Below are positions 39,561 through 62,800 of a stretch of DNA of 64,000 nucleotides, piece after piece. The translations under genes were made by a program, and so were the position numbers. The stretch comes from Anthoceros angustus. Its lineage: Eukaryota; Plantae; Anthocerotophyta. The stretch is taken from contig MU008163.1 in NCBI GenBank assembly GCA_010909165.1, positions 1,302,001 through 1,366,000 on the forward strand. The letters are read 5' to 3'. Under the pieces are notes generated by a model, which was not told the DNA's origin, did no database searches, and worked only from the letters and a program-made list of their open reading frames with translations. Each line of letters begins with the position of its first letter. Position 1 is the first letter of the stretch.

Positions 39561-40521
39561 CGCCGTGGTAACTGTGCCTACTGTGTACTGTAGCTCAAGC
39601 TGGGATCCCTTTTCATACGCGGCACGGCATAAAGGGTCATTAACCTGGAACTTTTTTTAAGTTTATCTTAAGGAAAGAGGAGATGGGTGAACCCGTCTTC
39701 ATACTTCATACGTGGCACGGGGCACGGAATAAAATGTCATTAATTAGGAATTTTTTTCATTTTTATTAAGGAAAGAGGAAATAGGTAAACCCATCTACTT
39801 AAGGGAGACCCTAAGCGTCATAGTAAAGAAGGAGCAACTAAGCTTTGTATTTAAAGTCATCTGCAGCAGCTACAATGTCATAACTAAAGGAGATAAAATG
39901 GCCTATATATTACTAAACTAGCCGAGGATCTCCAACGGAGACGTTTGTTGTCCATGCTTACAATGTCATAATTAGGGAGATTAAATGGCCTACATATTAC
40001 TGAAGTAATCAAGGATACATCTCCAGCAGACGTTGTTATTCGTAGGTAATCAAGGATACATCTCTAGCAGACGTTGTTATTCGTAGGATAGTCCCTTCCA
40101 GTGTCCTTTGGTGGGCAATAGACACCCACTGCCGAAAGAAGAAGTGATGAAGCTACTGGCTCGACCTCGCACTCTTTGAACTTGCCCAATTTTGACAAGC
40201 ATATTCTTTTTCTTCCTTATTATGAGTGAAGAAACGTGACATAGATAATAACTTGGGAAGTAGGATGGTGAAGATCAAGGAATGATTGTTTGGCTGAAAA
40301 GACCTGAGGTTTTCTATATGAGGCTATGTCTCCTTTTTTTGCGATTCCCTGTAATCTACTGATATTTACACAAAAAAAAATATTATTTCTATTTTATCAG
40401 ATGGGTAGAGAGATTGATTGATAAGGACTTCAAAAATGTAATTTTGTCCGTATATATGCAATACTAGGACTGTAGGAGGCAGCTGACGCCCGTGGCTATT
40501 CTTCTCCCTTGTTTTGGAAGC

Positions 40522-41499
40522 TTATTCCCCTTGGCTATTCAGCCAAAGGGAATCAAAGAAAGTATCTTGAGCTATTTCTGCTACTGTTTTACACTTCAAT
40601 ATCCCTTTTCTAAACATATAAATTTGTTTGGAAAATATCGAAAGTTGGTCATCTTGACGCACCATTAAATGAGCTACCTCCGCCAGAAACTCGACCCACA
40701 AAACATTAATTTTTGGGAAGTTATGTTTCCATTTTTTGCCGACAATCAATTTTATTTCAGTCCACACTCTTATAAAAGAATGACAGGTACAACTTTCAAA
40801 TTTTACGTCATACAAATTTTTGAAAAAAATAGTGGAACCTCTTTGAAGACGGGACACTCCAAAGTCTATGATCGAAACTTTTATCCCATAGGTTTTGATC
40901 CATCTTTCCTCATAATTTATTTGATATCTTTCTGTGCTTTCCTTGTTATGGCTACGAGATATAAGAATATTATTATTATGTGCATCTCGATGTTCAAAAC
41001 CAAAAGCGGCTTCTGCCACTTCCATGGCTAGAATGATTTGTAAGAATGTACTTTGAAGTTCTCGTACATTTCTAAATTCAAATTTGTGAAAAGGTACCCC
41101 ACCATCTTCTTGCATCATGACTATAAACTTTTGATTGTGTGGATATTCTAGAGGATGTTTTGGTTTCCCATTTAGCCATGATTTCTTAGCTCTAGAGAGT
41201 TCAGCAGCATATGGTCCTTTACATTGTATTTCCCATTTGTTCATCATAAAGTTAGTACAAAAATACGAACCAGTAGGATTTTGCAGTGTGGCCAACATCT
41301 TTGCGATCTCCACTTCGTTGTTAATATCATTTAAACTTCGTATAGGTGCTATCTTTAGTATAAAATCTTGAAATTTAAAAATTTCTCCAAACGCCCCTTC
41401 ATTTATCTTTTTTATATTTTTCATATCTACACCCATAGAGGTCAAAGCAGTAGTCATGTCGGTAACTCTTTCTCTTTTAAAAATGCAACAGCAATCCAT
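40522..41499 (-). CDS. Intronless Haspin-like protein kinase, copy 1 (kinase domain only)
   Basis: KINEGAFGEIF, LKIAPI, NEV, EDGG, LQIILAMEVAEAAFGFEHRDAHNNNILI, IKTYGIKVSIIDFGVSRL, W...F...NVLWV: Haspin-specific motifs. Likely ATG at 41499 (MDCCCIFK) by alignment to copy 2. Confidence 0.85.
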   Translation of the reverse strand: MDCCCIFKRERVTDMTTALTSMGVDMKNIKKINEGAFGEIFKFQDFILKIAPIRSLNDINNEVEIAKMLATLQNPTGSYFCTNFMMNKWEIQCKGPYAAELSRAKKSWLNGKPKHPLEYPHNQKFIVMMQEDGGVPFHKFEFRNVRELQSTFLQIILAMEVAEAAFGFEHRDAHNNNILISRSHNKESTERYQINYEERWIKTYGIKVSIIDFGVSRLQRGSTIFFKNLYDVKFESCTCHSFIRVWTEIKLIVGKKWKHNFPKINVLWVEFLAEVAHLMVRQDDQLSIFSKQIYMFRKGILKCKTVAEIAQDTFFDSLWLNSQGE

Positions 41500-43128
41500 G
41501 TTTCCAGGTTTGCTTAGCAAATAGTAGAGTAACACCTTAAACTTCAATAGAAGATGTCACAAAGCACTTAAAACTAGGATGACATTATATAGGTTAATTT
41601 ATAGTGGAAAATGATTTGAACCGAAGGTTTTTTGTAACATAAAGCTCTATGGAAGCAAGCACAACACCAACCAGTTTATTTGTGTCCACAAGGCTCCTCG
41701 CAAGCAAACACAACAACAACAACTTTATTTATTTCCGCACGGCTCTATGCAAGCAAACAAGATAACATACAAGTGATAAAGAAGATATTGGATGTGAAGC
41801 CCTCTTATATCCGTCCAAGTGAACTAAAATAGACTTTTCTTTTTCTTGTATATACTATAAAGGAATAGTCAACTAACAAGCTACTATTTGTTAATAGGTA
41901 TCCAATTTTAGCTTCTTCCAATCTAGGTAATAATTAGTTTTTAATTTTCTGATAAATTAATAAAATTCTAATATTGATTCAAGGTAATATTTATTTCATC
42001 CTTTTTTAGTAGCAAGTATTAATTACTTTCTCTTCCAGCAAGAAGAACTTTTTGTACTTAATGATATCCCATATAAATCATTGAGGAAGCCTTTAAGGAC
42101 TTTGTGGCATGTCTTATAAGACCGAATTCATGAGTATAGATTAGCATCACCATTTTTTGACGTGGCCTTCACCCTCATCTTCAAACACCTTTGCAATTGT
42201 GGGTTTGAGATTTTCAAAAGGCTCCAACGTATACAAACGTGCCACTCCTCTCCAAATTGCAAAAACAAGATCCACCGAGAAGAAAAGTAAAAGATACATA
42301 AACTAGAAGATGAGAGCAAAAGAAGGCTGATCTCAAACTCACCCGTGGTCTTTCACGCTGTGGAGTCTGTACACAGTTTAAAAACGATTGGTGTGGTGCA
42401 TGATATGCAACGTCCTTGTGGATTCTAGCGGATCGTACTTAAATGAAAGCCCTAATCATTGACAGCGGAGAATGGGGGAACAGAAGTTCACACATTTGAT
42501 GCCCACTTGATCCCGACTTGTTTGTCGAGTTACCGCCCAAATGTTTGCAGTCTGGACAGCAGATTGCAGAGGGCTGCGCAGTCCCAAGATTGCGTGCAAG
42601 TTGCAACCAAATTTGAGCCAAGTATATGCACAAGATGAACCATGGGAGTCGATGAGGAGCACATCATCGTGATCTGGAACAGTGGATGGCGGGTAACATA
42701 CAGGAACCAGAGAAGGGATCGAGCAGGCTCTATCAAGCGAGATTTTACAGACGAGAGACGGGAAGAGAACGTCTGCAGGAAGCTCTGCCAGCCAGGAAGC
42801 CCGGAATGGAAAACAGCGTGGCTTGCCGGGTGCTCTAAAGCCGACCCAACCGGACGAAATCAGTGTCCCTTCGTGCCTCCTCTGCTTATCGCCTTCCTTT
42901 GCCTCCAGTCCAATCGTTTATGGAACTTGTCGACTTCACTGGTCGGCGCCCAGCCCGAAGCTCTGAGTAGTCCTCTCCTGAAGGTGGTGGATGCACGGTG
43001 GTGGGCTCGTGCATGCGGTTGTGGGCTGTGGGAAATTGCGAATGCGGTGGTGGGCTGTGGAAATGCGGTGGTTGTTGCGAGGAAAATGCTGATCCGGAGA
43101 TGGGTTTTTGCAGGTGGTTGGGACAGAG

Positions 43129-44283
43129 ATGGAGGCCCGTTCCAGAGCGGTGCGGACTTGCCTCACAGTCGCCCTGTTTCTGGGTTCGGCGTCGTTGGCA
43201 GCGGCCGAGCTCAAGGTCGGATTCTACCACGGCAAGTGCAAGGGGCGTGATGTGGAGCGCATCGTGTCCGTTGCTGTGAAGAAGGCATTCCTTGCCGACC
43301 GCACCGTCTGTGCTTCCTTGATCCGCCTCCACTTCCACGACTGCTTCGTTCAGGTGAGCATGAGCTCATGCCCCTCTGATGTAACTTCGTGTACAGTTGC
43401 TCCGAGAGAAGTCCCGCTGAATCCAACAGGGCTGCAGGGGTGCGATGGTTCCGTCCTGCTGGACACCCCTGACAGCGAGAAGAGCTCGCCCCCGAACTTC
43501 AACTCGCTGAGAGGATTCGATCTGATCGAGAACATGAAACGTTCTCTCGAGAAATGCTGCCCTTTGCTTGTGTCGTGCACGGACATCCTCGCCCTGGCCG
43601 CACGCGACTGCATTGCACTCGTAAGTCTTCCACACCTGCAGTTCAAAATTTCTATCCCGTCAGGCTTTCACAACTCTGACACTCAGACGAATGGCCATCG
43701 ACACGTGCAGCTGAAAGGCGAGGCCTACGCTGTGCCCACAGGCAGGTTCGACGGCCTGACATCCGGCGGATTTCTGGGCCCGCTGCTGGGCCTCCCTGCT
43801 CCGTTTCACCCCATCGCCACCCTGGAATCCATCTTCGCCAAGGTGGGGCTGCACAAGAACGATCTGGTGGTGCTCTCGGGCCTTCACACGGTCGGGCGGG
43901 CGAGGTGCCTCACATTCTCCAACCGCCTCTACGACAGCTCCGGCAACCCAATCCAGGACCCGCTCTTGACACCGGCCCGTTCCGCCCAGCTCCGACAGTC
44001 GTGCCCGTTCGGCGGAAACGGGGGCATCTTTGTGCCCATGGACACCACTTCCGCCATCGTCGACACCAGATACTTCCAGGGAATCGTGGGAAAAACGGCT
44101 CTCTTCAACTCCGACGATGCTCTCCTGGACGACCCCGACACTGCCGCCATCGTGCAGCGGCAGGTGGTGAGTCCTCGCTTGGAATTCGTTGGAGTGGGCG
44201 CGTCCATGATCAAGATGGGATCTATCGGGGTTCTTTCAAGCAGTACCGGCCAAGTCAGGTTGCACTGCAACCAGACCAACTAG
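43129..44283 (+). CDS. Class III secretory peroxidase, 3 exons
   Basis: Signal peptide, LKVGFY, ASLIRLHFHDCFVQ|GCDGSVLL (distal His), VSCTDILALAARD, GRFDG, LVVLSGLHTVG (proximal His), DTRYF, MIKMG. Confidence 0.95.
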   Translation: MEARSRAVRTCLTVALFLGSASLAAAELKVGFYHGKCKGRDVERIVSVAVKKAFLADRTVCASLIRLHFHDCFVQVSMSSCPSDVTSCTVAPREVPLNPTGLQGCDGSVLLDTPDSEKSSPPNFNSLRGFDLIENMKRSLEKCCPLLVSCTDILALAARDCIALVSLPHLQFKISIPSGFHNSDTQTNGHRHVQLKGEAYAVPTGRFDGLTSGGFLGPLLGLPAPFHPIATLESIFAKVGLHKNDLVVLSGLHTVGRARCLTFSNRLYDSSGNPIQDPLLTPARSAQLRQSCPFGGNGGIFVPMDTTSAIVDTRYFQGIVGKTALFNSDDALLDDPDTAAIVQRQVVSPRLEFVGVGASMIKMGSIGVLSSSTGQVRLHCNQTN

Positions 44284-44646
44284 ACTAGATCGTAGGCGGC
44301 GACACCCTCGTCGATGCGAGGAGACAAGTCGCGAATTTTGCAGCTGGAGTCATTGCGGGCCATACAGCCTGTGTCCTTCCCGTGTCCGCACGGCTTTTGG
44401 GATACCTATTGTGCATCGCCCTTAATGGTTCTCACGAGTTTCATCACAGATTCCCTGATGGCTGCATGGGTGCGTTAGCAGAATGGAGACCTGGCCAGAG
44501 TAGAAATCTGCCCCTCTGTTGTGATCACACAGTCTTCTAACAAGGTGTTCTTGTCGACGACTCGACGGAGATTGAACGAAATACAGGAGTGGAGCGGATG
44601 TTTTTATGTTATATGTATCTTATTTTCTGCATGTATTGCGCAACAG

Positions 44647-44718
44647 GGAGGTATAGCTCAGTGGTAGAGCAATCGGCTGCAGTCCGATAGGTCATCAGTT
44701 CAATCCTGGTTGCCTCCT
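44647..44718 (+). tRNA. tRNA-Cys (GCA)
   Basis: Cloverleaf: acceptor GGAGGTA/TGCCTCC, D arm GCTC-AGTGGTA-GAGC, anticodon arm ATCGG-CTGCAGT-CCGAT, T arm ATCAG-TTCAATC-CTGGT, discriminator T; upstream CAA and AT-rich box. Confidence 0.92.
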
Positions 44719-45069
44719 CATCCCCCCAAGAAATATGTCATCTGTGGATTTAGTCTTTTGTGGGTTGAAACTTCTGGATGTTCCATGCCGTTACGGGGGA
44801 CATCCAGAAGTTTAACCCCGTTTTTTGAAACTCCAGCGTGGCGGACGCAACCAGCAGTGGCAGCTCGGAAGGGTGACCGGGGCGCACAACCAGGAGCAGG
44901 AGCCGGCTGTGACGCTGCTATCTGCAGGTTTGGCAACCTACAACGATGATGTCAGCTCGCTCACGCTACTATCTGGCTATTAGAAATGATTTATTATAAT
45001 ATATTATGAATAGTGTCCCAAAACACGTTATCAAGAGTGTCCTAAAAATAACAAATTTGTATATTTTCA

Positions 45070-45289
45070 AGGTCAAGTGACCAATAGGATTCAAGGATAA
45101 GGACTATATAAGGCCAAGCCCACCTAGGTATGGGGTATGGTGTGTGCAAATGTGCTTGTGTGCTAGTACCTAGTGTGCCTAGTGCATATAACCCATATTG
45201 TATGGGAGTGTTGTGTTCTCTTTTAATAAAGGCTTAGCTCTTTTCCTAACTTGGTAATAGAGCCATATTCTAGAGCCAATCTTCACTCA
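45070..45289 (+). mobile_element. Possible solo-LTR-like fragment
   Basis: ctatataagg TATA-like box at about 45105, aataaa at about 45225, ends ...cactca in AT-rich context; no TG start or target-site duplication confirmed. Confidence 0.3.
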
Positions 45290-45307
45290 GGGGTTTTTTC
45301 AATTTTC

Positions 45308-45697
45308 CTGACCCTGTTATTGCGGGAGTTTGCTTGAAACAAATGTGGGAAATGAGGACCACCCAAATTCAACTTCTCAACTTACCGGTCCTGACCCTAT
45401 TATTGCAGGAGTTTGCTTGAAAACCACCCAAATTCAACTTCTCAACTGCTTGAAACAAATGTGGGAAATGAGGACCACCCAAATTCAACTTCTCAACTTA
45501 CCGGTCCTGACCCTATTATTGCAGGAGTTTGCTTGAAAACCACCCAAATTCAACTTCTCAACTGCTTGAAACAAATGTGGGAAATGAGGACCACCCAAAT
45601 TCAACTTCTCAACTTACCGGTCCTGACCCTATTATTGCAGGAGTTTGCTTGAAAACCACCCAAATTCAACTTCTCAACTTCAACTTCTCAACTTACC
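45308..45697. repeat. Tandem repeat, about 3.3 x 116 bp with internal subrepeat
   Basis: cctgaccctattattgcaggagtttgcttgaaaaccacccaaattcaacttctcaact...; identical short ORFs start at 45413 and 45529. Confidence 0.95.
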
Positions 45698-47591
45698 GGA
45701 TATTTGATTATGCTTCACAGCACTCGTCTCTATGCCAGACTCAGAATAGCAGTTAATTTTCATGATAATCTCTCTGTATATCTGTTGGTTGCTGTCTGTG
45801 CTTCACTATGGTGTACCGATTGCATACCCTTCGCTTATCGTGTGCACACCCTTCGCGGTTCCTGAAAAAAGTTGTTTTTTCACACACTCTCACATACAAA
45901 ATACTATATTCATATATATTTTTGTCCACATGGCACCAAATACATACAAATCTTAACCATGCATTGCTTCTGTACGATATCTAGAGCCAAAAGTGCATTT
46001 CGTGCAGCGTGCTTCAAAAACTTTCGGCCGTCATTTTAGGGTTTTGTTTTCGGATCCAGTCTAAAAAGAGGTATGTTCACACGGTGAGTTTAGGGTTTAG
46101 GGTTTCGCAAGGCCGATTGCTTGCTTGGTCAGGGTCCAAGCTACATCAGGAGCGTCTACTGTGGCCAGAAGTACCTAGGTGCCCAGAATTGGACCAGGGC
46201 CGTCAAACCCTAATGCAACCCTAACCCTCCGTACGGAAATATTTTGAGAGTGTGTGCAATCGGTACAACGGGCGGAGGACTTGGGGAACCGTTTTGATAC
46301 TCCCTACCACTCCGAAACATAGTTCATGGAGACATGCCATCCTGGTTTCCCTGGTGCGAGTCCTCATGGATGACAAATATATCATACCTATCGTCCTATC
46401 CTCGCGGCTTGAGCAGCAGCTCGTATGCAGTTTAGCAAAAGAGAGGCGGGAAACGGGGTTTCTGGAACATGTCCACAACTTTTGAATAGCATGCGTCTAA
46501 ACAGGAGGTCCTCGTAGATTGGACGCCGCTCATTCAACCTTGTGTGTTGCGAGCCTGACATCCATCACACGGAATCCACCTGTCTCCAGGTCTCCGTGTG
46601 TGAGCTGCGCCTCGGTGACTCCATCCACCAGAGCCAACCTCCCCTCCGTTTGTGCAATTTGCAATTCGGCTGAACATTGCATTCAACCAGGCCAAGACAG
46701 ATCACTCAGCGGCGTCGCCGAAGGCACCTTGCTGTGGTCCCCTACTTTTAGCAATCAAAACCGCTTGGTGACATCTTCTATCTCCTGGCCAGCGTACTGC
46801 CCGATCCTCCATGGAAGGCGACAAGTGCTTATTGTGCGTGATCTTGTTTCACAACGCGGAACAGGGCCGTCTCTGCAGCAGCAACATCAAATTCTGAGGC
46901 CCAAAAACGTTCTGGCCGAGAGTGGCCACCCTCGCTCTGGGACTGAATATTGGAATCCTACTCTCCCTACTCGATCGATAAGAAAGGAGGACTTGGCCAG
47001 CCGCTCAAAACCTGTCAATAGAATATAGATGCGCAACCGACGCTGAGGTATACTCCCACTTGCTTCTTCAGGTTTCCGTGCAGCACCGCCTCCTTCCGAA
47101 CTTGGGGCCAGACAGGTCTAGGTCTAAGAGCTGCTGCACACACGCATTCAACTTGCAGGCATTTAAGCTAAACTGCTAGCAGCTTAAACTCCTAGTTACG
47201 AGCTAAAGTGCTTACGGAGCATGTATGTCAAACTTGCTTGCAAGATGACCAGCTTACATGCAATTTCACGCGGGAGGATCAGAAAAGTACGGGCTATGAC
47301 ATGGAAACCAACTATGGAGGTCGGAGGTTAGTGGTCTGAGGGATGCGAAACTAGGTTCGGGAGGAAGGATGGGATCTTTCAAGGTTTTATGGCTTGATGA
47401 GGGGTTTTGCTTGAAGCAAAGTCCACAAGGACCGAGCACCAAGTCTATTAAATCTTTTCTCCGTAAGGAATGGTGTGTGTTGATAGTCCAAAGCCAAATC
47501 TGGTAACGACATCCTTGGCTAAATGGTCGATAAAAGGATCTACAAAAACACCTTCATCGTCAAGAACCAGCACACTAGGTGACTCTTCCTG

Positions 47592-50000: not shown

Positions 50001-50817
50001 GATTCACCTCGCCCTTGCTTTTGCCCTGACTCATCATGCCCTCCGATCCAGCCCAACTACCAACCCATAATACTGCCCATGAGACATGGCTGATCACAGC
50101 CCCATCATCCGTTGCATCACCACCCACAGAAGGCCGGGCTGCTTAAGCGCCTGATCCCCCCGAAGCGAGCTAAACATCAATCGCAGCCACACGCAGAGCA
50201 CAGAGCGCACAACACCGGGACCTTCGCCCCATGAGCTGTCCTGCAAATCTCACACCGCTGATACCACTCCTGTAAAGCCGAGTGAGATCCGGCTCTCTCG
50301 GGAGCTCAGAAACGGATGAGGAACCGCCGCTCCGGAAACTACCAGGACCCAGGCACCAGAATCCGGTGCCGGGCTCTCTCGAGAGCATCAACCCACCAGC
50401 CACAGGAGCGGGAGAGGTACAACTACGGGATCACAAGCTTCTCATGCTGGGGCCGGGGCCGGGGCCGGGCGTTGGGCTCTGTAGCTCTTCCGGTGCCAGT
50501 GGTCAGGTCAGCCCCCGGATTGCCGAGTCCATTCCACATCGAGTCTCTGTTTCCGACGAGGCCAACGCGTTGGCCCGCCATGGCAGAGAGAGAGTGATGG
50601 AAATGGCAAGTAGCAGGCAACTGGCCCCGCTTGCGCGCCTCTTTCACTGCTGACATGGAGGACAACTTTTCCTACGCAGCGCAGGTGCGTGCAAAACCTG
50701 CGACATAGACAAAACCATCCATGTACATGACTCCCTGCGACAACTCTCATGTGATCAGATGGTGTAAAGGACTGCGGAAGCCATCTGACCAAGCAGGATT
50801 ACAGCCAGCAAAAGCCA

Positions 50818-53800
50818 TTAAAGAAGAAAGCAGCCTTCCTCCAGGATTTGTGCGGAGAGCTGATTCAGTATTTCTGTGATCTGCTGGTTCTGTTGGTGGT
50901 TTCTGCCTGCTACGAACACCTCGACGTTGCCTCCGTGCTCGATCCAGCTCTGCCCCGGTCTCTTGGATGCACCTGCAGCACTTCTTGAGTCCTCTACCAT
51001 GGTTGCCTCCTCCAGCATGTCAGCATGGGCGTAGATGTTTGACATGAGGATGTAGGATGCTCTGTGCTCTGGTTCTAGCGCGACAGCGTGGTGGAAAGCA
51101 CGTCGGCCAAGCTCCACGTTGCCATACTTTCGGCATGCGCCCAGTAAGGATAGCCACATGCCCAGTTCAGGTTGAACTGGGAGTTTCAGGATCAGATCTT
51201 CTGCTTCCTTCAGGAGACCTGCACGGCTTAGAAGATCAACCAAGCTGGCATAATGCTGGAGGGTGGCACTGATTGCATGGTCTCTGTCCATGGACTCGAA
51301 GAACTGAAGGCCCCTTTCCACTACACCAGCATGACTGCAAGCAGTAATGACGCACAGGAATGTGACTGCATCTGGTCTTATGCCGGCGTCTTGCATTTCT
51401 TCGTAACACTGCAAAGCTATTTCAGATTCCCCTTGTCGGGCATATCCAGCTATCAATGAATTCCATGACACCACGTCGCGCCAGAGCAACGTGTCAAACA
51501 CATGCCGGGCATTCATCATGTTCCCACATTTGCCATACGCGTGAATGAGAGCATTCCCCACATCGAGAGTCCAGTTTTGTCCATCTCTGCATATGTCTCG
51601 GTGGATCTGGCTACACATCCGTAAAGCTCCTACGTTGCTGCAAGCTTTTAGGATGCATAGAAATGTAGCCTCTGTGGGCTCGATTCCCTCTGCCTTCATC
51701 TGAGGATAAAGCTGCATAGCTTTCTCACCCTGCCCTTGCAGTGAGTATCCTGAAATCATGGAGTTCCATGACACCACATTGCGCTCTTCTAGTGTGTCAA
51801 ACACTGCCCATGCATCCACAACGCTCCCACATTTGGCATACATGTAGACAAGTGCGTTGGCAACCATTGAATTTGATCCGTATCCCCTTCTCAGCAGTTC
51901 AGCATGTATTGCTTTACCCTTCTGCAAGGAGTCCAGCTTCAATGACTGACCCTTGATGAAAGTGTCCTTCTCCCTTTCTGCCAGGCTGCTACATGCTCTG
52001 AGTGCACTTACGAACATCCAGTTGTTTAAACTTCCACCCTCCTGCTGTATTTGGGCAAAAATTTGCAGCGCCTCCTCCCCTTGTTCGTCTGCATATCCGG
52101 CAATTATTGCATTCCACGATACCACATCTCTCTGGGGTAGATTGTCAAACACTTGACGCGCATCCACAAGGCTGCCACATTTTGCATACATGTGGATAAG
52201 GTTGTTTCCAACATAAACATCAGAATCACAGCCCATTCTAATCGCATCCGCATGAATGGCCTTACCCTTTTCAAGGGTCTTCAGCCTCATCGAGTGTCCA
52301 GAGACAATAGTCTCCTTTTCCGTCGCTGCCAGGCTGCAGCAAGCTGTGAGGACGCTGACAAAGGTTCGGGTGTTAGGCGTCACACCCTCCGTGCACATTT
52401 GGACATACAGCTGCAGGGCTTCGCTACCCTGCTCTTGCTCAGCATATGCAGCAATCATAGCACTCCATGAGACCACATTCCGAAGCGACAAGGTGTCAAA
52501 TACATGCCGTGCATCCAACATGCTGCCACATTTGGCATAGACGTCAACCAGAGTTGTGCCCACAAACACATCGGATTCACAGCCCTTCAGAATAAGCTCG
52601 GCATGAATGTTCCGACACCGCTGCAGAGAGACATGTTTCACAAGTCTTCCATCAAGAAGTGACCCCTTCTCCAATGCTGCCAGGCTCCCACAAGCTCTCA
52701 GTATGCTGACAAATATCCAATTGTTTGGCATAACCCCCTCTTGCTTCATCTGAGCATAAAGCTGCAACGCTCTATCACCTTCTTCTTGAGCTGCATATCC
52801 ACCAATAATTGCATTCCAGACAACCACATTTCGTTGGGGTAATGTTTCAAAGAAATGCTGAGCATCAGACATGCTCCCACATTTTGCATACATGTCCACC
52901 AACGTAGTGCCAACAAATATGTCTGAATCATAACCCTGCCTGATGACTTCAGCATGGAGCGACCTGACATGTCGAAGAGAGGGCGATTTGACACCTGGCC
53001 CGCCATCAGGTCCTCCATTTGCCATGTCTGCAAGGCTGCCACAGGCTTTGAGTAAGAACACAAATGTCCGACTGTCCGGCATCACACCCTCAATCTGCAT
53101 GCGAGCATACAGGTGCAGAGCCTCCTCACCCCCTTCCAGTTCAGCATACCCAGCAATCATAGCATTCCAGGACACCACGTCTCTCTCAGACAAGGTGTCA
53201 AACACATGCCGTGCATCCAAAATGCTCCACATTTTGCATACATGTCCACCAACGTAGTGCCAACAAATATGTCTGAATCATAACCCTGCCTGATGACTTC
53301 AGCATGGAGCGACCTGACATGTCGAAGAGAGGGCGATTTGACACCTGGCCCGCCATCAGGTCCTCCATTTGCCATGTCTGCAAGGCTGCCACAGGCTTTG
53401 AGTAAGAACACAAATGTCCGACTGTCCGGCATCACACCCTCAATCTGCATGCGAGCATACAGGTGCAGAGCCTCCTCACCCCCTTCCAGTTCAGCATACC
53501 CAGCAATCATAGCATTCCAGGACACCACGTCTCTCTCAGACAAGGTGTCAAACACATGCCGTGCATCCAAAATGCTCCCACATTTTGCATACATATGCAC
53601 GAGAATGTTGCCGACAAATGAATCAGAACGATGACCTAGGCTGACAAGGTCTGCATGAATAGCCTTCCCCTTCTGCAGGCACTCGACCTTTTTCAGCTGC
53701 CCCTCAGTGAGGGTATCTGTTACAGTCTCAGCCAACATGCCACATGCCTTCAGTGCACTGACGAAGACCCTACTGTTTGGGAGGACACCCTCTTCTTGCA

Positions 53801-54830
53801 TTTGGTCATAGAGGTGCAAAGCCTTCTCAAACTGTTTTTGCTGAACAAATCCTGCAATCATTCCATTCCATGACAGTACACTCCGTTGTGACATCTTGTC
53901 AAAGACGTGCTGTGCATCCACCATGCTCCCACATTTTGTATACATATGTATTAAGCTGGGTCCCAAATAGGAATCCAATGCAAAGCCCCTCTTGGAAATT
54001 TCAACATGAATCATCTTACCCTTGAGGAGGCAGCTGGGCTTGACGATCTGTCCGTCGATGAAAATCCCTTCCTCCATGCTTGCCGAGCTGCTGCAAGCTT
54101 TCAGTACTCCAACGAAAGTCCAGTTGTCCGGATTGCAGCCTCCCTTAAGCATTTGTAGATAGAGTCCTAAAGCCATGTCCCCATCCTGTTGTTGAGCATA
54201 TCCATCGATAATCGCATTCCACGATGCCACTCTAGGGCGGGATAGTGCATCAAAAACTGCCCGCGCTTCCGAAATGCTCCCACACTTTGCATACATGCTG
54301 ATAAGAGTGGTGACCACGTAGGCATCTGACTCATAACCCCTCCGACTCAATTCCCCGTGTATCCATTTTCCCTGAGACAGATCTGCCAAGCTGCTGCAGG
54401 CTTTCAGCACGCTGATAAATATGGGCTTGTTCGGTTCTTGACCTTCATCCATCATCCGGTAGAACGTTTTCAAAGCCTCTCCACCTTGACCTTTGGCAGT
54501 AAATCCTGAGATGCCTGCTTCCCAAGAGGAAGCACTGAGTTGGTCCAAAATGTTGAAACACTCCGGGGCTCCTGATCGACCCCCAATGGAAACCATAGAA
54601 TTGCTCATACACCTCCTATCCGTCTCCAGCCCATGGCTGGATATGTCCCTGGCCACGCAGGTCTCAACAGAGGCCACAGAGCCCACAATGAGGTACCGGA
54701 CCAGCCCCTCCTTCGCATGTCCATCTCCACACAGACGCCTGACGTCCTCGCCGCCATGGAGCGCAGTACTAACCGGCACCAGGTTCGTCCTCCATGGACA
54801 AGCTCGTGACGAAGCGCTGGAAGCTAGCAT
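50818..54830 (-). CDS. PLS-class PPR protein with E1/E2/E+ terminus and no DYW domain; split by one apparent 1-bp frameshift near 53228
   Basis: Repeating VVSWNAMIAGY / TFVxxLKAC / LVDMYAKCG motifs; ends WLSLLGAC...SYILMSNIY...KRPGQSWIE (PG box)...EEGCFLL*. Restoring one C joins the two ORFs into about 1340-1350 aa. Confidence 0.9.
52874..53590. repeat. Perfect tandem duplication inside the PPR gene, period 350 bp (351 with one C restored)
   Basis: attttgcatacatgtccacc at 52881 and 53231; taaccctgcc at 52931 and 53281; gacaccacgt at 53171 and 53521. Confidence 0.95.
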
Positions 54831-55215
54831 GCAGGTTAGAGCTGGACACTTCCAGCACTGTTCAGGCACTCTACACCATCATGCCTTCAGGCTCCATTCA
54901 TGTGTAGAATCAAACGCCCGAAGAATGCCTGTAATACCCGGTGCATGAGCAGCTACCGTGCGCCATTTCCTCCCAGCGGAAATTTTCACTGCATGAAAAC
55001 ATACCTTAAGCTAAACCATTAAACTGTTGCCTGCTTGCTAGGATGCCACCACGCATCTGAATCACAAAATGACAGAGCATACATGCTAAGTGCGAGCATC
55101 GAGATAAGGGGTTCAACAGCTTTTGTAACATGCTGTGGAGATGGTGCCGGCGCACTTGCTCTCAATTTCCAACAAGGACAAGTAAACTCTTGTCCAGCCA
55201 TTGCAGGAGGGATTG

Positions 55216-55352
55216 TACATAGTTTGTGTGCTACCCCAGTAACTTGTAGAGATTCCAACTTCAAGAACTTGGAACCTCCACAATACATAGTTTGTGTGCT
55301 ACCCCTATAACTTGTAGAGATGTCAACTTCACAAGAACTTGGAACCTCCACA
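55216..55352. repeat. Tandem repeat, 2 x about 69 bp
   Basis: acatagtttgtgtgctacccc...taacttgtagag...caagaacttggaacctccacaa occurs twice. Confidence 0.85.
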
Positions 55353-55625
55353 AGCCACATCCTTTTTGTCTCACAAACTTCAAGGTCTTTACGGCATTGC
55401 CAAACCTTTCATGTGCTCAAGAAGGACTGCCAGCACCGTTGCAAGCCTGTTGATGATCCATTCCATTATTAAGTATTGCTGTTTAATCTCCTTCACATTT
55501 ATATGAATGGTTTTCAACAATAATCTTCGAAAACCAAGTTATCTAGTAAATTTTGATAAAAGTTTAGTTGATATATTTGCTTCACATATTAATAACACAC
55601 GTCTAGTCCCGGGCTCACCTGCAGT

Positions 55626-55803
55626 GCTCCCTTTTCTACTTCGTCCCCTACACTGCTCCCTTTTTTAGTTCGTCCCCTACATTGCTCCCTTTTCTACTTC
55701 CCTTTTCTACTTCGTCGCCTACACCGCTCCCTTTTCTACTTCGTCCCCTACACTACTCCCTTTTCTACTTCATTGCCTACACTGCTCCCTTTTCTACTTC
55801 GTT
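55626..55803. repeat. Minisatellite, about 6 x 29 bp
   Basis: gctcccttttctacttcgtcccctacact units starting at 55626, 55655 and onward. Confidence 0.9.
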
Positions 55804-57463
55804 CATTTGGATGCTTCATCTCTAGTCCACAACCATCTCTCTTATAAGCATGTGACGGTGCTTTATATCTAGTCCACAACGTCTCTCTTTTTATCTCTTT
55901 TATAAACTCGTGACAGTGGTTGACAAGGACCATATTATCAAGAACCATATTATCATCCCAAACTTAAATGTAGCGTTATCAGTACTAGGTACATTAATGA
56001 TGTTTTAATATATACAGATAACACATTTTTTATACTAGTTTGTTGTTGGAAAAGGAGATTGGAACAATATTGACTTGATTTTATCATGTTTTTAGAGGTT
56101 CAAATGAATTGATTCATCACGGCATAGTAATATAATCCGCCCACCTAGGAAGGGGCAATGATAATATCTCGTTGATGTGAGGACTCCTTGTCCCAAGACT
56201 CTATAGCTCAAACGTGCTTAACTTGGGGGATTGTATTCTCTCATGCTTTACGACACCCCAAGTCTCTCATTTTTTTTCTTCTGATTTTTGTGGATTGGGT
56301 AATCTTTAGTCACCCTTTTAACGAATAATCAACGATGACAAAAAGAGAAGAAGTTAGATTTAGGAAACCCAGAAAGTCTCTAAAGCCGATTATACCGATT
56401 CCACTAAAATGCAATTAGCTTCTCCACCTCAAGTTGCCATGCGGTAAGAGCTTCCTCTAGACTAGACAAAGTCATCTACTTTTCCAAAAAAATTCTAGAC
56501 TAAGAGAGAGGGGAGAAAGGGAATATGGATGGGAAGTAAGAGGTCCAGGCCCTGCTCTCGAAGGCCTAGCAGCAATCAGAGTTTCTGATATGGTCGGAAG
56601 CCTAAGAGGCCTTGCTGCAAGATATGGGGCAGAAGGGAGGTGCCAGGGGTAGAGGGTAGGGGGATAGAGGGAAGGGGGATCTGCACAAGAATATTGGAGC
56701 CGATGCAGCAATGTATGGCAGCCCTTATTTTCGGGCAAAGGTAAAGGTGGGGAGTTTTAGTGGGTGAGGGAGTTCTTCCCAAGTCCCACATAACCTGCGA
56801 TGGTATCTAGCACGTACTCGGATGACCTCGGAAGAGTAAAGTCTCTTCCTGTTGGGATGATACGATGTGTAACATAGGGGAATCAGAACCCTTGCTGAAG
56901 ATTTCTCCCCCGGGGTTGTTTTGATTTATCTTCAAAATACCAAATTAAAAAAAAAAATCTGCACAAGAAGGGTTAGGAGAAGTGCCTTCTTGTTAGAATT
57001 TTGTTAAATTAGAAGTATATTCAAAAAATATTTACTAGATTGGAAGAAGCTTAAATTGAATACTTATCTAGAGGTACTTTCTTGGTTGGCAATTCCTCTA
57101 TAGTATATATAGGGGGCTTGGGGCCAGGGCCTCAAGCTTGGATATAGGGCTATATCCAATATCTCCTTGACCACCATTCTCATATTTCACTATTAGTGCT
57201 ACATATAATTATGTTGTCCTCATTATATATCACTCTTCATTAACTTATGTGATATCATCCTTCTAGGTTTAACTTCTGTTATCACATGTCTTATAGTAAC
57301 GGGGGCTAATCCCCTTGGCCTGGTGCCCTCCGTAGGGTTGTTTCGCTTTGTCTTGGGGTAGATGGAATTTCTCATCTTGTTTTTTATATAGAGTCTCCCG
57401 TTTCATCTCTTATTAAATTGTAAGGTGTTACTATATTTTTTGGTACTACTGTAGATGTAGGAT

Positions 57464-58540
57464 ATGGATTTATTTTTAAATTTAAAAAGAAATAATATTG
57501 AACCTTTAGATAATTTTAAAATAAATACCATAGAAAATATGGAAATTATGGATATGACTACAGCTTTAAACTATATGGCCATACATATGATAAATATAAG
57601 AAAAATAAATGAAGATACATTTGGAGAAATTTTCAAAATTGGAAATCATACACTTAAGGTAGTAGCGATACGAAGTATAAGTGATAACAATAATAATGAA
57701 GTGCAGATTGCAAAGAATTTGGCTACATTGCAACAACCTGCAGGATCATTTTTTTGTACCAACTTTATGATGAACAAATGGGAAATAGTATGTACAGAAC
57801 CCTATGCTGCTGAACTCTCTAGTGCTAAACGATCATGGCCAAATTTGGGAATTTCAAAACATCCTCTAAAATATCCACTCGATCAGAAGTTCATCATTGT
57901 ATTATATGAAGACGGTGGGGTACCTTTGCACACATTCAAATTTAGAGATATACGAGAACTTCAAAGTACAATCTTACAAGTTATTTTAGCCATGGAAGTG
58001 GCAGAAGCAGCATTTGGTTTTGAACATCGAGATCTACATGGTGATAATATCCTTATCTCTCGTAGTGACAATGAAGAGAGCAAAGAAAGATATCACATAG
58101 ATAATAAGGAAAGATGGATTAAAACCTATGGGATAAAAGTGTCCATCATCGGCTTTGGAAGGTCCCGTCTTCAAAAGGATTCACATGTTTTATTCAAAGA
58201 TTTGCATGACATAAAGTGGAATGATTTTTCCTATGATTCTCTTAAAAAGGTGTGGGCTGAAACGAAACTGATAGTGGGCAAAAAATGGAAACATAATTTC
58301 CCCAAAACTAATGTGTTGTGGGTTAATTTTTTAGCAGAAGTAGCTCATTTACTCGTGTGTCAAGACGAAAAACTTTCGATATTTTCTAAACAAATCCATG
58401 ACTTTAGACAAGGGATACTGAAGTGTGAAACTATAGGAGAAGTAGCTCAAGATAGTTTCTTTAATTCCATTTGGTTCAATTGGGGCGATTTTGAAAATGG
58501 ACATTACGACCAATATTTATATGATGTAGCATTGAATTAA
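57464..58540 (+). CDS. Intronless Haspin-like kinase, copy 2 (probable pseudokinase), 358 aa
   Basis: Collinear with copy 1: KINEDTFGEIF, LQVILAMEVAEAAFGFEHRDLHGDN, IKTYGIKVSIIGFGRSRL, WKHNFPKTNVLWV. Confidence 0.85.
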   Translation: MDLFLNLKRNNIEPLDNFKINTIENMEIMDMTTALNYMAIHMINIRKINEDTFGEIFKIGNHTLKVVAIRSISDNNNNEVQIAKNLATLQQPAGSFFCTNFMMNKWEIVCTEPYAAELSSAKRSWPNLGISKHPLKYPLDQKFIIVLYEDGGVPLHTFKFRDIRELQSTILQVILAMEVAEAAFGFEHRDLHGDNILISRSDNEESKERYHIDNKERWIKTYGIKVSIIGFGRSRLQKDSHVLFKDLHDIKWNDFSYDSLKKVWAETKLIVGKKWKHNFPKTNVLWVNFLAEVAHLLVCQDEKLSIFSKQIHDFRQGILKCETIGEVAQDSFFNSIWFNWGDFENGHYDQYLYDVALN

Positions 58541-59819
58541 CCTTTAGTTATAATTTACCATATTCAACTTCTTCCTTGAGTCAAAACTTCTATTTTCTCC
58601 TTGCTTGCCCTCGTACTATATGGTTGTTTTGTGCGCACCGTGTTTTTCTTCCTGTTCTTATCTTGTGCTTGTCGGATGGTGCTACCGGCTTTCTGCACGT
58701 CTCTTGTATCCAGTTTTATTTGGTCCCCTATTCATTTAGTTCTTTAAATGAGACCAGATTAGTTCCCAAAAAAAACCTTTTGCATAGAATTTTTCTCTTA
58801 GTTTTTCAATTTTCATGTGAACTATGCTTAGTGTGCAATTTATTAAGCAAGTAAAGATAAAGAGGGCTTACCTAGCATAAAGCACCTTGAAGAGACTCCT
58901 TGGGTCACTTAAAGAAGGAACAACTAAGTTTGCACTGTGTCTAAATTCCGTCTAAGTGGACTATAATAAAATTCTTATTGTTCTTTTTCTAAAGTCACCT
59001 ATCGTGCCTATGAGATGGAAGCTTCTACATACTTAACTTAAGTCAGTTCGAGGATGCATCTCCAATTATCATCGTTGTCCTTTCAATTGCTCCCGCAAGT
59101 GACCTTCGAAGAGCAATGAACATCTATTATCAAAAGAGAGAGGTGTTTAACTCTAGAATACCCAAGTCACTCAAATTAAGCCTTCTCACCCATGTTATTT
59201 AACATTATGTACAATTTTTGAATGACACTGGTTCCGTTTCTTGAGGGGTTTGTAAATTTTTTAAAAGATTCTTTCGTGTTGCGACCCGATATTTTTGTCA
59301 AATATTTTCAGTTATTTTGTGTAACATAGAGGGCATAATTTACCACAAAGGGAAACCTTAACATGAGCCATTATTACTTGGGTACTCATCAATTGGTCCA
59401 GGTTTTTAGTGCATTGGAAAGGTCTTTTCTTAAATTATGTGCCTTATTGTTTAAGAAAAATAAAATATTTTGAGAAAAATATATTTGTCAAAATATTTTT
59501 ATCTACGAATTCTTGGAGGATCATTTAATTTGTGTGCCACATCATTTCTTGTTAGGTAACTTGCCTGCAAGAAAAAAAGCAAAAAGACTTGCTTGCGAGA
59601 AAGAGGTGTTGTTTGTGGTACCTAATTAATAGTATGGAACACGGAGACTTTTTAGACATGCAGAGATGGAAAGAAAGTAATTTTATAGTTCATGGTGTAA
59701 AAGGTTATATGTGTGTTAGCTTTTTCAGTCCTAATATGTCTTATAGTGTGTTTTGTATGTTTGCAGTTGATCTTAGGCTGTGATGTTATTGCTGTGAAAG
59801 GTTTAAAATCGTTTATCAC

Positions 59820-62800
59820 CCTTCAAATCAAGCAAGGGTGCTAGACCAATTGAATTCCAAGCACTCGCTCAAGGTCAAGGAGGTCTTGGATAAATATCTG
59901 GAGGCAGACATCATCTTCCCAATCGTAAACAGCGAATGGGTAGCGCCCATTGTCGTCGTGCCCAAGAAACAACAAGGACAGATCTGTGTCTGTCAGGATT
60001 GGAGGAAACTCAACGCCGCCACCGAGAAGGACCATTTTCCCATGCCCTTCGTGGACGACATACTGGACAAGGTGGCAGGACGGAGTACTTATTCCTTCTT
60101 GGATGGATACTCCGGCTACAACCAACTGCACCTAAGGGAGTCGGACTGCGATAAGACAACGCTCACCACGGGGAACGCTGGCCTAAGCGGCGCCGGATGA
60201 CAGGAGCACCCGGGTCATTCATGCGGATGGTGACTAACGTCTTCAGGGATTTTCTGAGGGACTTCATGGAGGTATTCCTGGATGACTTCTGTGTACGTGG
60301 AGAGGAAGACAAGCACGTTGGGCACCTGCGGAAGTGCTTGGAGCGTTGTAAGGAAACTCAGCAGTGTCTACATCCGGAGAAATGCTACTTTGGAATGACG
60401 GAAGGAATCCTGCTGGGACATCGTGTGTCGGCGCGAGGGATAGAGGTGGACCAAGATAAGGTCAGGGTCATTCAGTCCCTGCAGCCGCCCACGAATCTGA
60501 AGGAACTGCGGGGATTCCTCGGCATGGTAGGTTATTACAGGCGGTTCATTCAGGACTTCGCAAAGAGGGCCGCCAAGCTAACGGAGTTACTCAGGAAGGA
60601 GGAGGAGTGGACCTGGACACCAGAAAGGAACGCGGCATTCAGAGATCTACAGACCACCCTGATAAGCGCTCCGGTATTAAAAGGTCCGGACTGGAGTAAG
60701 CGGTTCCATGTGTATGTAGACGTGTCGGCCTTCGCCATCGGAGTGGTGCTCAGTCAAAAGGACGACAAGCGGAGGGATCATCCAATCTACTATGCTGGAA
60801 GACAGCTCACGCATGCGGAAGTACACTACTACGGAGCGAGAGGCGTTGGGAATGGTATACGCGGTCAAGAAATTCAGACACTATCTTCTGCCCAACGAGT
60901 TTGTGTTCTATGTCGATCACTTCGTGCTCAAGCATCTGGTGAATAAGGCAGACCTGTCCGCAATTGCGAGGTGGATTCTGCTGCTCCAGGAGTTCACCTT
61001 TGAGGTGGAGACCCGGCAAGGGAGGGAACACCAAAATGCTGACTTCTTATCCAGGTTGAAGACGGAGCCGACCCTGCGGGATCAGGAGGATGACTTTCCG
61101 GACGAGGAATTGGTGGCAGCAGTGGGGACACAGGAGGAGGAGCGCAGTCTAAAGAACCCCAAACTTGTGGATGCAGAATCAGAGCGGAGAAGGGAGCGAC
61201 GAGAGGACGGCCCACCCATGAGTTGGAACTGCACTGTGGGAGATGGAGATTCCAAAGGAGTTAAACTGCCCAACAACAGCCTTCAGACACTACGCCGCCC
61301 TTCAGATGTACAATGGATGTATCTTTAAGGTGGGACCCCACGGTGGAGCGAGGTACCTTCAACAAAGTAAACAGAGGTAGTCATAAAAGGGATGCATGAA
61401 GGCTGGGCGGTGGTCATTATAAAGATGTGTCACCACCAAGAAAATCTTGAGGCGGATCGGTGGCCCACCATGTATGGAAACGCACGCTTTGTAAAAGATG
61501 TGATGCTTGTCAGCGGATCGGGAAGCCGACCCCCACGACGCAATGGCCGCTGGTGCCCATACTCGCACTAGCACCGTTTGAGAAATGGGGTATCGACTTC
61601 GTCGGACCTATACAGCCTACGACGAAGCACACACAGAAGAGGTACATCCTGGTGGCAACGGACTACTGTACCCGGTGGGTGGAGGCGGCGGCAACAAGGA
61701 CGGACTCTGCAAGCACCGTGGCAAAGTTCCTCTATGAGAACATCATCACGCGGTATGGGTGCACGTTGCAGTTGGTAAGTGATAGGGGAACTCATTTCCT
61801 CAATGATGTGATAACTGCAATGACGGACTATTTCGGTATAAACCATCGCAAGATGGCTCCATACAACCCGAAGGCCAATGGGTTAACGGAGAAGACTAAC
61901 GGACTTATGTGTCGCATCCTGAATAAGCTCACGATTAACTATGCGCACGATCGATACTAAGCTACCATCCGCTATGGGCCTTCGTGACGGAGAAGGTAAC
62001 TACGCAACGAACTCAGACATTTAACCTATGGGCATTCGCCGTTATGCCCGTGGAGTTTGAGGTACCAACGCTCCGAGTCATGATGGAGGGACGCTTAATG
62101 ATGAAGAAAGCCAACCGAGCGAGGGTTTGTCCAAGATACCTAAAGGCGGAGGAGGCGCAAAGACAATGCAATCGGTACAAAACCGGCGGAAGCTATGGCA
62201 TCACCGCGACCCGCAAGGTGGAGTATGTGAAGGAGGGAGATCTAGCCCTTCTTTCTGACGATCGCCATATGCACTTCCCGGCAAGGGAGGCAACACCAAA
62301 ATCGACTATCCAGTTGAAGGCGGGCCGACCACTGGGATCGGAGGATGACTTTCCGGACGAGGAATTGGTGGCAGCAGTGGAGACACAGGAGGAGGAGCGC
62401 AGTCTGAAGAACCCCAAACTTGTGGACAGCGCAACCGTAGCAGAAGCGGAGAAGGGGAGCGGACGTAGAGGACGGCCCACCTATGCGGAGCTGGAACGGT
62501 ACCTGTGGGAGATGGAGATTCCAAAGGAGTTAAACCGTGCCCAACAACAGGCCTTCGTACATTACGCTCGGCCCTTCAGGATGTACAATGGATGTATCTT
62601 TAAGGTGGGACCGGACGGTGTGGAGCGTAGGTACCTTCAACAGGCAGAAACAGAGATAGTCATAAAAGGGATGCACGAAGGCCTGGGCGGTGGTCATTAT
62701 GTTGCACAGGTCACCACCAAGAAAATCTTGGAGGCCGGATACTGGTGGCCCACCATGTATGGCGAAACGCACCAGTTTGTAAAAAGATGTGATGCTTGTC

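What the first reader, a model, noticed from the sequence alone, without database searches (positions are those of the whole stretch)
39650..59830. Two AT-rich islands each carry an intact, intronless, kinase-only Haspin-like gene
Seen: 40522-41499 (minus) and 57464-58540 (plus) are about two-thirds identical in protein by manual alignment, have AT-rich codon use unlike every neighbouring gene, lack introns, and stay open over more than 320 codons despite divergence, which implies purifying selection. Known: canonical Haspin is usually a low-copy H3T3 kinase with a long N-terminal regulatory region, and the plant gene is multi-exon. Inference: a separate, mobile or expanded Haspin-derived family (retrogene, TE cargo or foreign/viral origin) with its own role, for example in chromatin or cell-division control. 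This is the best candidate for an undescribed system here.
Basis: partly seen in the sequence, partly recalled or inferred. Interest (0 to 1): 0.82.

Follow-up and report, generated by a model that had tools for sequence, protein, structure and literature searches.

The report
Divergent kinase-only Haspin gene pair
A land-plant genome segment carries two intact, intronless, very divergent copies of the Haspin kinase domain in AT-rich patches; both have been kept by selection, one looks catalytically complete and the other has lost a key catalytic residue, and nothing close to them was found among about 15 billion public proteins.

Summary
ORF A (40522-41499, minus, 325 aa) and ORF B (57464-58540, plus, 358 aa) are 68% identical in protein and 80% in DNA. 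Both match Pfam Haspin_kinase well above its cut-off. A model of A superposes on human Haspin (TM 0.83).

They sit in patches of 33-36% GC. Their GC3 is 0.27-0.30, against 0.52-0.74 in all neighbouring genes. dN/dS is 0.36 (bootstrap 95% 0.25-0.51). All indels are in frame, and conserved promoter-like blocks lie upstream.

They are not ordinary orthologues. Canonical land-plant Haspin kinase domains are 53-74% identical to each other but only about 30% identical to A and B. An exhaustive HMMER search of 1.84 billion cluster representatives found nothing closer.

A keeps every catalytic residue. B has Gly in place of the metal-binding Asp. Both have replaced Haspin-specific substrate-region residues and carry a neutral-to-basic charge instead of the usual acidic one.

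Most likely this is an old, 5'-truncated retrocopy of a streptophyte Haspin that was duplicated and took on a new role. I found no support for a viral origin or for transposon cargo. The host species, genome-wide copy number and expression are unknown.

The parts
39600..42400 (.). AT-rich island A (GC about 0.36) holding one ORF and short local direct repeats
   Evidence: Composition in 200-nt and 1-kb windows. There is no other ORF of 100 aa or more apart from an antisense one inside ORF A. Local direct repeats were found but no terminal repeats.
40522..41499 (-). Haspin-like gene A: 325 aa, kinase domain only, full catalytic set (beta3 Lys, alphaC Glu, HRD Asp, catalytic-loop Asn, DFG Asp)
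   Evidence: AlphaFold2 model pLDDT 91.2. TM 0.82-0.83 to human Haspin structures.
41500..41971 (-). Upstream region of A, with blocks conserved against the upstream region of B, including a TATA-like block about 350-380 nt before the ATG
   Evidence: the conserved blocks are 76-90% identical, in otherwise unalignable sequence.
55400..59830 (.). AT-rich island B (GC about 0.36) with a 29-nt tandem array at 55586-55829; it abuts a degenerate Ty3/gypsy pol fragment on its right side
56993..57463 (+). Upstream region of B, homologous to the upstream region of A
57464..58540 (+). Haspin-like gene B: 358 aa, kinase domain only. It has Gly where the metal-binding Asp of DFG/DYT should be, and Asp in place of the second P-loop Gly. 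It is a probable pseudokinase or weak kinase.

Best explanation
A and B are lineage-restricted paralogues derived from a streptophyte Haspin. I infer the following history.

1. A processed, 5'-truncated copy of a Haspin mRNA kept only the 3' part. In every canonical Haspin that part is the C-terminal kinase domain.
2. The copy landed in AT-rich, repeat-bearing DNA and gained its own promoter and start codon.
3. It diverged strongly. It lost a loop of about 10 residues in the N-lobe, replaced the Haspin-specific substrate-region residues, changed from an acidic to a neutral or basic surface, and changed D-F/Y-T to a DFG-type motif.
4. It was later duplicated, together with about 470 nt of upstream sequence, into an inverted pair about 16 kb apart (dS about 0.5).

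Both copies have since been under moderate purifying selection. A is predicted to be an active Ser/Thr kinase with a substrate other than, or in addition to, the histone H3 tail. B has lost the metal-binding Asp but stays open and constrained. It is predicted to act as a pseudokinase, for example as a scaffold or regulator, possibly of A.

Shown: family membership, fold, divergence, composition, selection, residue states and absence of close relatives. Inferred: the retrocopy route, the change of substrate and the pseudokinase role.
For: Family and fold:
- Pfam PF12330 at 91.5 and 88.6 bits.
- Human Haspin is the only strong structural match, TM 0.83 and E 1e-24. The next kinases score TM below 0.5.

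Divergence:
- The best of 1.84 billion representatives scores only 162 bits. The top hits are canonical Haspins of Selaginella, Physcomitrium, Calypogeia, Diphasiastrum, Riccia and Amborella.
- A and B are 29-32% identical to these, against 53-74% among them.

Plant ancestry (weak):
- A shares 4 and B shares 3 of 8 streptophyte-specific signature columns. Both share 0 of 4 holozoan ones.

Intron state:
- The Physcomitrium Haspin gene has at least 13 coding pieces, and its kinase domain is split by at least 8 introns. A and B have none.

Selection:
- Omega is 0.36 and uniform along the domain (0.34-0.37). Indels are in frame only.
- Conserved upstream blocks suggest a shared promoter.

Residues:
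- A keeps 40 and B keeps 37 of the 59 columns that are at least 90% conserved in 47 canonical Haspins.
- A has Lys, Glu, HRD, Asn and DFG-Asp. B lacks that Asp and one P-loop Gly.
- Net charge is +7 (A) and 0 (B), against a canonical median of -10. The post-DFG segment is +4 and +3, against -2.

Literature: most organisms, plants included, have one Haspin gene (PMC3113928).
Against: - No poly(A) remnant or target-site duplication was found, and the parent gene cannot be examined.
- A neighbour-joining tree leaves A and B on a very long branch. It does not place them inside plants.
- The signature-column counts are small.
- AT bias reaches into the amino-acid composition: FYMINK is 0.37-0.38, against 0.23-0.29 in canonical kinase domains. 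This means long evolution under AT pressure and would also fit an AT-rich donor genome.
- Part of the dN/dS signal could predate arrival in this genome if the two copies were separate acquisitions.
- No expression data are available.
- The host genome is absent from the protein collections, so copy number is unknown.
Confidence: 0.55

Rival explanations
1. Foreign origin. The gene came from an unsampled AT-rich donor, such as a large DNA virus or another eukaryote with an intronless Haspin-like gene. It arrived either once and was then duplicated, or twice from related donors. Much of the purifying-selection signal would then have accrued in the donor.
For: GC3 is 0.27-0.30 against 0.52-0.74 in the neighbours, and the amino-acid composition is AT-shifted. 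The flanks are AT-rich too, and they are not homologous between the islands beyond about 470 nt upstream. The genes are intronless. No close relative exists in any sampled organism. The tree leaves them unplaced.
Against: No Haspin-family gene was found in 2.9 million viral contigs with the genes' own motifs or family hallmark motifs, and none in metagenome contigs. The viral structure library gave only generic kinases with TM at most 0.65. No second ORF or viral hallmark gene lies in either island. The best sequence hits and the shared signature columns are streptophyte. The flanks hold no intact ORF while the kinase ORFs are intact, which points to selection in this genome.
Confidence: 0.15
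2. Transposon cargo. A and B are gene fragments captured and spread by a non-autonomous DNA transposon or Helitron-like element. The islands would be the element bodies.
For: Two dispersed copies lie in opposite orientation in AT-rich, repeat-bearing patches. Island B lies next to a degenerate Ty3/gypsy fragment. A captured fragment could explain the kinase-only truncation.
Against: No terminal inverted repeats, LTRs or target-site duplications bound either island. Homology between the copies stops at the end of the ORF and about 470 nt upstream, so no element ends are shared. There is no transposase or other element ORF. Omega of 0.36 and intact frames are unusual for captured fragments.
Confidence: 0.1
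3. Relics without a present function. The genes were constrained earlier but are now decaying. Copy B, which has lost a catalytic Asp, would be the first to go.
For: B lacks the metal-binding Asp and a P-loop Gly. B shows slightly more unique changes than A in most outgroup comparisons. The genes lie in AT-rich, repeat-rich patches that could be silenced. No transcript-derived protein close to them is in the collections.
Against: Both frames are open over more than 320 codons, against 6.5-12 nonsense hits expected per copy. Omega is uniform and low along the whole domain. The rate asymmetry is not significant in 8 of 9 tests. Upstream blocks are conserved. The lack of transcripts is uninformative, because the host itself is not in the collections.
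Confidence: 0.12
4. They are simply this lineage's ordinary, single-exon Haspin orthologue, locally duplicated.
For: They are full members of PF12330. Mammalian HASPIN is itself intronless (PMC8254168).
Against: They are about 30% identical to all canonical Haspins, while mosses, liverworts, lycophytes, a fern and angiosperms keep 53-74% identity among themselves. They have no N-terminal region. About a third of the near-invariant Haspin columns are replaced. Their composition is unlike the host's genes. A syntenic contig from a related species has no such gene.
Confidence: 0.03

Closest known systems
Canonical plant Haspin (AtHaspin, At1g09450, and its orthologues; histone H3 Thr3/Thr11 kinase; PMC3113928)
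   Same: Same Pfam family and the same atypical kinase fold. The F-E-H-R-D-x-H..N catalytic loop, beta3 Lys and alphaC Glu are present. The best sequence hits are plant Haspins.
   Different: Only about 30% identity. No N-terminal regulatory region. No introns. An N-lobe loop is about 10 residues shorter. The motif is DFG (A) or GFG (B) instead of D-F-T. The conserved post-DFG substrate-region residues are replaced. Net charge is basic or neutral rather than acidic. The genes are AT-rich.
Haspin-related gene expansion in Caenorhabditis (more than eight predicted proteins with some homology to the Haspin kinase domain; PMC9277076, citing Higgins 2001)
   Same: Lineage-specific, divergent extra copies of the Haspin kinase domain alongside a canonical gene. 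Their function is unknown.
   Different: A different kingdom and an independent event. Here there are two copies in compositionally deviant islands. I found no plant counterpart in the literature searches.
5'-truncated processed retrogenes
   Same: Intronless copy of a multi-exon parent that keeps only the 3' (C-terminal) part, followed by new regulatory sequence and fast divergence.
   Different: No poly(A) tract or target-site duplication can be recognised. The parent gene has not been seen. Both copies share upstream sequence, so the second copy arose by DNA duplication and not by a second retroposition.

Membership tests
Haspin kinase family (Pfam PF12330) | Profile match above the curated gathering score | tested here: met
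   91.5 bits (A) and 88.6 bits (B), against a cut-off of 25.
Haspin kinase family (Pfam PF12330) | Haspin-type atypical kinase fold over the whole domain | tested here: met
   The model of A (pLDDT 91.2) matches 12 human Haspin entries at TM 0.81-0.83, E about 1e-23 to 1e-25. Other kinases score TM below 0.5. Caveat: the model used an alignment of Haspins.
Haspin kinase family (Pfam PF12330) | Catalytic residues: beta3 Lys, alphaC Glu, HRD Asp, catalytic-loop Asn, metal-binding Asp | tested here: inconclusive
   All are present in A. B has Gly at the metal-binding Asp position and Asp at the second P-loop Gly.
Haspin kinase family (Pfam PF12330) | D-Y/F-T-L-S-R motif in place of DFG, and the H-R-D-L-H-W-G-N catalytic loop | tested here: not met
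   The Thr is 91% conserved in 47 canonical Haspins, and both copies have Gly there. The Trp-Gly of the loop (94% and 100% conserved) is replaced in both.
Canonical Haspin orthologue (H3T3 kinase of mitosis) | Long N-terminal region followed by a C-terminal kinase domain | tested here: not met
   The ORFs are 325 and 358 aa, with only about 25-40 residues before the domain. Canonical hits are 476-1638 aa with the domain at the C-terminus.
Canonical Haspin orthologue (H3T3 kinase of mitosis) | Sequence conservation at orthologue level | tested here: not met
   29-32% identity, against 53-74% among land-plant orthologues.
Canonical Haspin orthologue (H3T3 kinase of mitosis) | Conserved acidic substrate region that receives the basic H3 tail; H3T3 phosphorylation | tested here: inconclusive
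   The near-invariant post-DFG columns are replaced in both copies. Segment charge is +4 and +3, against a canonical median of -2. Activity itself cannot be tested with these tools.
Processed retrogene | No introns where the parent gene has them | tested here: met
   The kinase domain of the Physcomitrium Haspin gene is split by at least 8 introns. A and B have none. The host's own parent gene has not been seen.
Processed retrogene | Poly(A) remnant and target-site duplication | tested here: not met
   None is recognisable downstream of either stop codon. At dS about 0.5 or older they may have eroded.
Transposon-carried gene | Terminal repeats (TIR or LTR), target-site duplication, shared element ends between copies | tested here: not met
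Endogenous large-DNA-virus fragment | Viral homologues of the gene, or viral hallmark genes alongside it | tested here: not met

The most novel reading that the evidence does not exclude
A and B form a kinase/pseudokinase pair, acquired from an unsampled AT-rich donor or born by retroposition. They have been recruited to a new, non-histone signalling role that is specific to one early-diverging land-plant lineage. This would be a branch of the Haspin family not described before, with a DFG-type activation motif and a basic surface.
Probability: 0.15. Interest if true: 0.75.

Novelty: new variant of a known kind. Interest (0 to 1): 0.5.

Why it matters
Haspin is treated as a single-copy mitotic histone kinase in plants (PMC3113928). 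The only known large expansion, in Caenorhabditis, is still unexplained (PMC9277076).

This pair shows how a core cell-division kinase domain can be copied without its regulatory region. It can then move into a different compositional compartment and still be kept by selection for a long time.

The pairing of one catalytically complete copy with one that lacks the metal-binding Asp is a concrete case for studying how pseudokinases arise. The compositional contrast also makes such genes easy to miss or mask in annotation, so similar families may be under-counted.

Tried and rejected
Searches that found nothing:
- Exact-sequence look-ups of A, B and the neighbouring Exo70 found nothing. The host genome is therefore not in the collections, and the absence of transcripts says nothing.
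- The word-based protein search gave only three distant Haspins.
- Viral-contig scans with the genes' own motifs and with family motifs were negative, as was one metagenome scan. Each scan used only two peptide patterns, so the negatives are not exhaustive.
- Rfam and tRNA scans found nothing in the islands.
- Pfam scans of ten other window ORFs were blank.
- Literature searches for Haspin together with giant viruses, bryophytes or Anthoceros gave nothing relevant.

Analyses that did not resolve the question:
- A syntenic contig from a related species (L001; PPR plus Exo70 at 66-73% DNA identity) has no Haspin-like ORF. Its flanks share nothing with the window, so it cannot date the insertion.
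- The neighbour-joining tree could not place the long A/B branch.
- The TRM61 search did not identify the host. TRM61 is 65-71% identical to mosses, liverworts, a lycophyte, a fern and angiosperms alike. A hornwort would fit, but that is my guess.
- CpG depletion is no stronger in the islands than in neighbouring genes. Deamination decay alone therefore does not explain the AT-richness.

Procedure:
- No spliced gene model was needed, so no exon joining was done.
- One search printed, for 59 scattered columns of cellular Haspins, the commonest residue with its share.
Full report
**Observation**

A is 40522-41499 on the minus strand (325 aa from the first ATG). B is 57464-58540 on the plus strand (358 aa).

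They are 68% identical over 312 residues and 80.5% identical in DNA over about 930 nt. Homology starts about 470 nt upstream of each ATG (A 41971 / B 56993) and ends just before A's stop codon. Nothing aligns downstream.

Each lies in an AT-rich patch: 39.6-42.4 kb and 55.4-59.83 kb, GC about 0.36 against about 0.5 elsewhere. GC3 is 0.30 and 0.27, against 0.52-0.74 for Exo70, two PPR ORFs, a peroxidase, an F-box/LRR gene, TRM61 and the retroelement ORFs. The bias reaches the protein: FYMINK residues make up 0.37-0.38, against 0.23-0.29 in canonical Haspin kinase domains.

**What the genes are**

Both ORFs match Pfam Haspin_kinase far above its cut-off and match human Haspin chains at E about 1e-20. 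An AlphaFold2 model of A (pLDDT 91.2, pTM 0.91) superposes on human Haspin structures at TM 0.82-0.83. The next best kinases stay below TM 0.5.

Each ORF covers the kinase domain end to end and little else, so 'kinase-only' and 'intronless in the coding region' both hold.

**Host and neighbourhood**

The window is land-plant nuclear DNA. It carries an Exo70 gene, E-type PPR genes, a class III peroxidase, an F-box/LRR gene, TRM61, U6 snRNA, tRNA-Cys and a degenerate Ty3/gypsy pol fragment.

The host is not in the protein collections. Its TRM61 is 65-71% identical to mosses, liverworts, a lycophyte, a fern and angiosperms alike, so the lineage stays unidentified. A hornwort would fit, but that is my guess and not a result.

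**Not ordinary orthologues**

An exhaustive HMMER search of 1.84 billion cluster representatives, standing for about 15 billion proteins, gave a best score of only 162 bits. The top hits are canonical, long Haspins of Selaginella, Physcomitrium, Calypogeia, Diphasiastrum, Riccia and Amborella.

Over 316 trimmed columns, canonical land-plant kinase domains are 53-74% identical to each other and 29-32% identical to A and B. A neighbour-joining tree leaves A and B on a very long, unplaced branch.

A count of clade-specific columns gives weak support for plant ancestry. A shares 4 and B shares 3 of 8 streptophyte signature columns, and both share 0 of 4 holozoan ones. The literature states that most organisms, plants included, have one Haspin gene (PMC3113928). 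The known exception is the Caenorhabditis expansion (PMC9277076).

**Selection**

Omega is 0.36 by NG86, with a bootstrap 95% interval of 0.25-0.51 and 0 of 500 replicates at or above 1. Other estimators give 0.37-0.56. It is uniform along the domain at 0.34-0.37.

With dS of 0.32-0.5, 6.5-12 nonsense hits per copy would be expected under neutrality. None is present, and all indels are in frame.

Upstream, short blocks of 76-90% identity survive in otherwise unalignable sequence. They include a TATA-like block about 350-380 nt before the ATG. This suggests a shared promoter that is still constrained.

**Residues**

Of the 59 columns that are at least 90% conserved in 47 canonical Haspins, A keeps 40 and B keeps 37.

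- A has the beta3 Lys, alphaC Glu, HRD Asp, catalytic-loop Asn and the metal-binding Asp.
- B has Gly at the metal-binding Asp position and Asp at the second P-loop Gly.
- Both copies replace the first P-loop Gly, the Trp-Gly of the catalytic loop and the Thr of D-F-T, so A reads DFG.
- Both replace the near-invariant post-DFG residues and lack a loop of about 10 residues in the N-lobe.

Net charge of the domain is +7 (A) and 0 (B), against a canonical median of -10. The post-DFG segment is +4 and +3, against -2. Rates in A and B do not differ significantly.

**Origin**

The Physcomitrium Haspin gene has at least 13 coding pieces over 5.5 kb, and at least 8 introns split its kinase domain. Loss of all of them at once, together with loss of everything 5' of the kinase domain, is what a 5'-truncated processed copy of a Haspin mRNA would give.

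No poly(A) tract or target-site duplication is left, so this remains an inference. The second copy carried the upstream region with it, so it arose by DNA duplication.

The evidence against a viral origin is as follows:
- Two viral-contig scans were negative. One used the Haspin hallmark catalytic-loop motif.
- The metagenome scan was negative.
- The viral structure library returned only generic kinases.
- Neither island holds another ORF.

The evidence against transposon cargo is as follows:
- There are no terminal repeats or target-site duplications.
- The two copies share no element ends.

A syntenic contig from a related species carries the PPR-Exo70 pair but no Haspin-like gene. Its flanks are unrelated to the window, so it cannot date the insertion.

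**Mechanism proposed**

A is an active Ser/Thr kinase whose substrate surface is no longer the acidic H3-tail groove. B is a constrained pseudokinase or weak kinase. Both are expressed from a shared type of promoter.

These are inferences from residue states and selection. Expression and activity are unknown. Roughly, dS of 0.5 puts the duplication tens of millions of years back under typical plant substitution rates (general knowledge, not computed here).

- One search printed per-column commonest residues with their shares for 59 scattered columns of cellular Haspins.
- The neighbouring retroelement fragment is described only by its bounds and by the number of ORFs it is split into.

**Verdict**

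This is a new, strongly divergent variant within the Haspin family, of moderate interest. The main gaps are the identity of the host, the genome-wide copy number and expression.

Noticed in passing
window 52877-53578: An exact 350-nt tandem duplication (two 100% identical copies, 702 nt in all) sits inside the PPR coding array, where the older repeats are spaced 351 nt apart. It coincides with the split of the PPR coding region into two overlapping ORFs (50818-53232 and 53157-54869). The syntenic contig L001 has a single 1169-aa PPR gene. This is either a very recent duplication or an assembly artefact.
   Followed up: partly
window 45331-45679: Three exact tandem copies of a 116-nt unit (GC 0.42) lie between tRNA-Cys and the Exo70 gene. 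They account for the third low-GC stretch of the window.
   Followed up: partly
window 59838-63508: A degenerate Ty3/gypsy pol fragment (RT, RNase H and integrase domains; GC 0.53) is split over six consecutive plus-strand ORFs. It has no gag or protease part and starts directly at the right edge of AT-rich island B.
   Followed up: partly
window 55586-55829: A tandem array of about 8 copies of a 29-nt pyrimidine-rich unit lies at the left side of island B. Two other short local duplications lie at 55216-55353.
   Followed up: no
window 17889-17989 and 44647-44719: A U6 spliceosomal RNA gene (107.6 bits) and a tRNA-Cys(GCA) gene. The tRNA lies between the peroxidase gene and the 116-nt repeats.
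   Followed up: no
L001 (Logan SRR33208241 contig, 15745 nt): The PPR-Exo70 gene pair is conserved in order and orientation in a related, unidentified species (Exo70 69% protein identity). Everything outside the pair differs from the window.
   Followed up: partly
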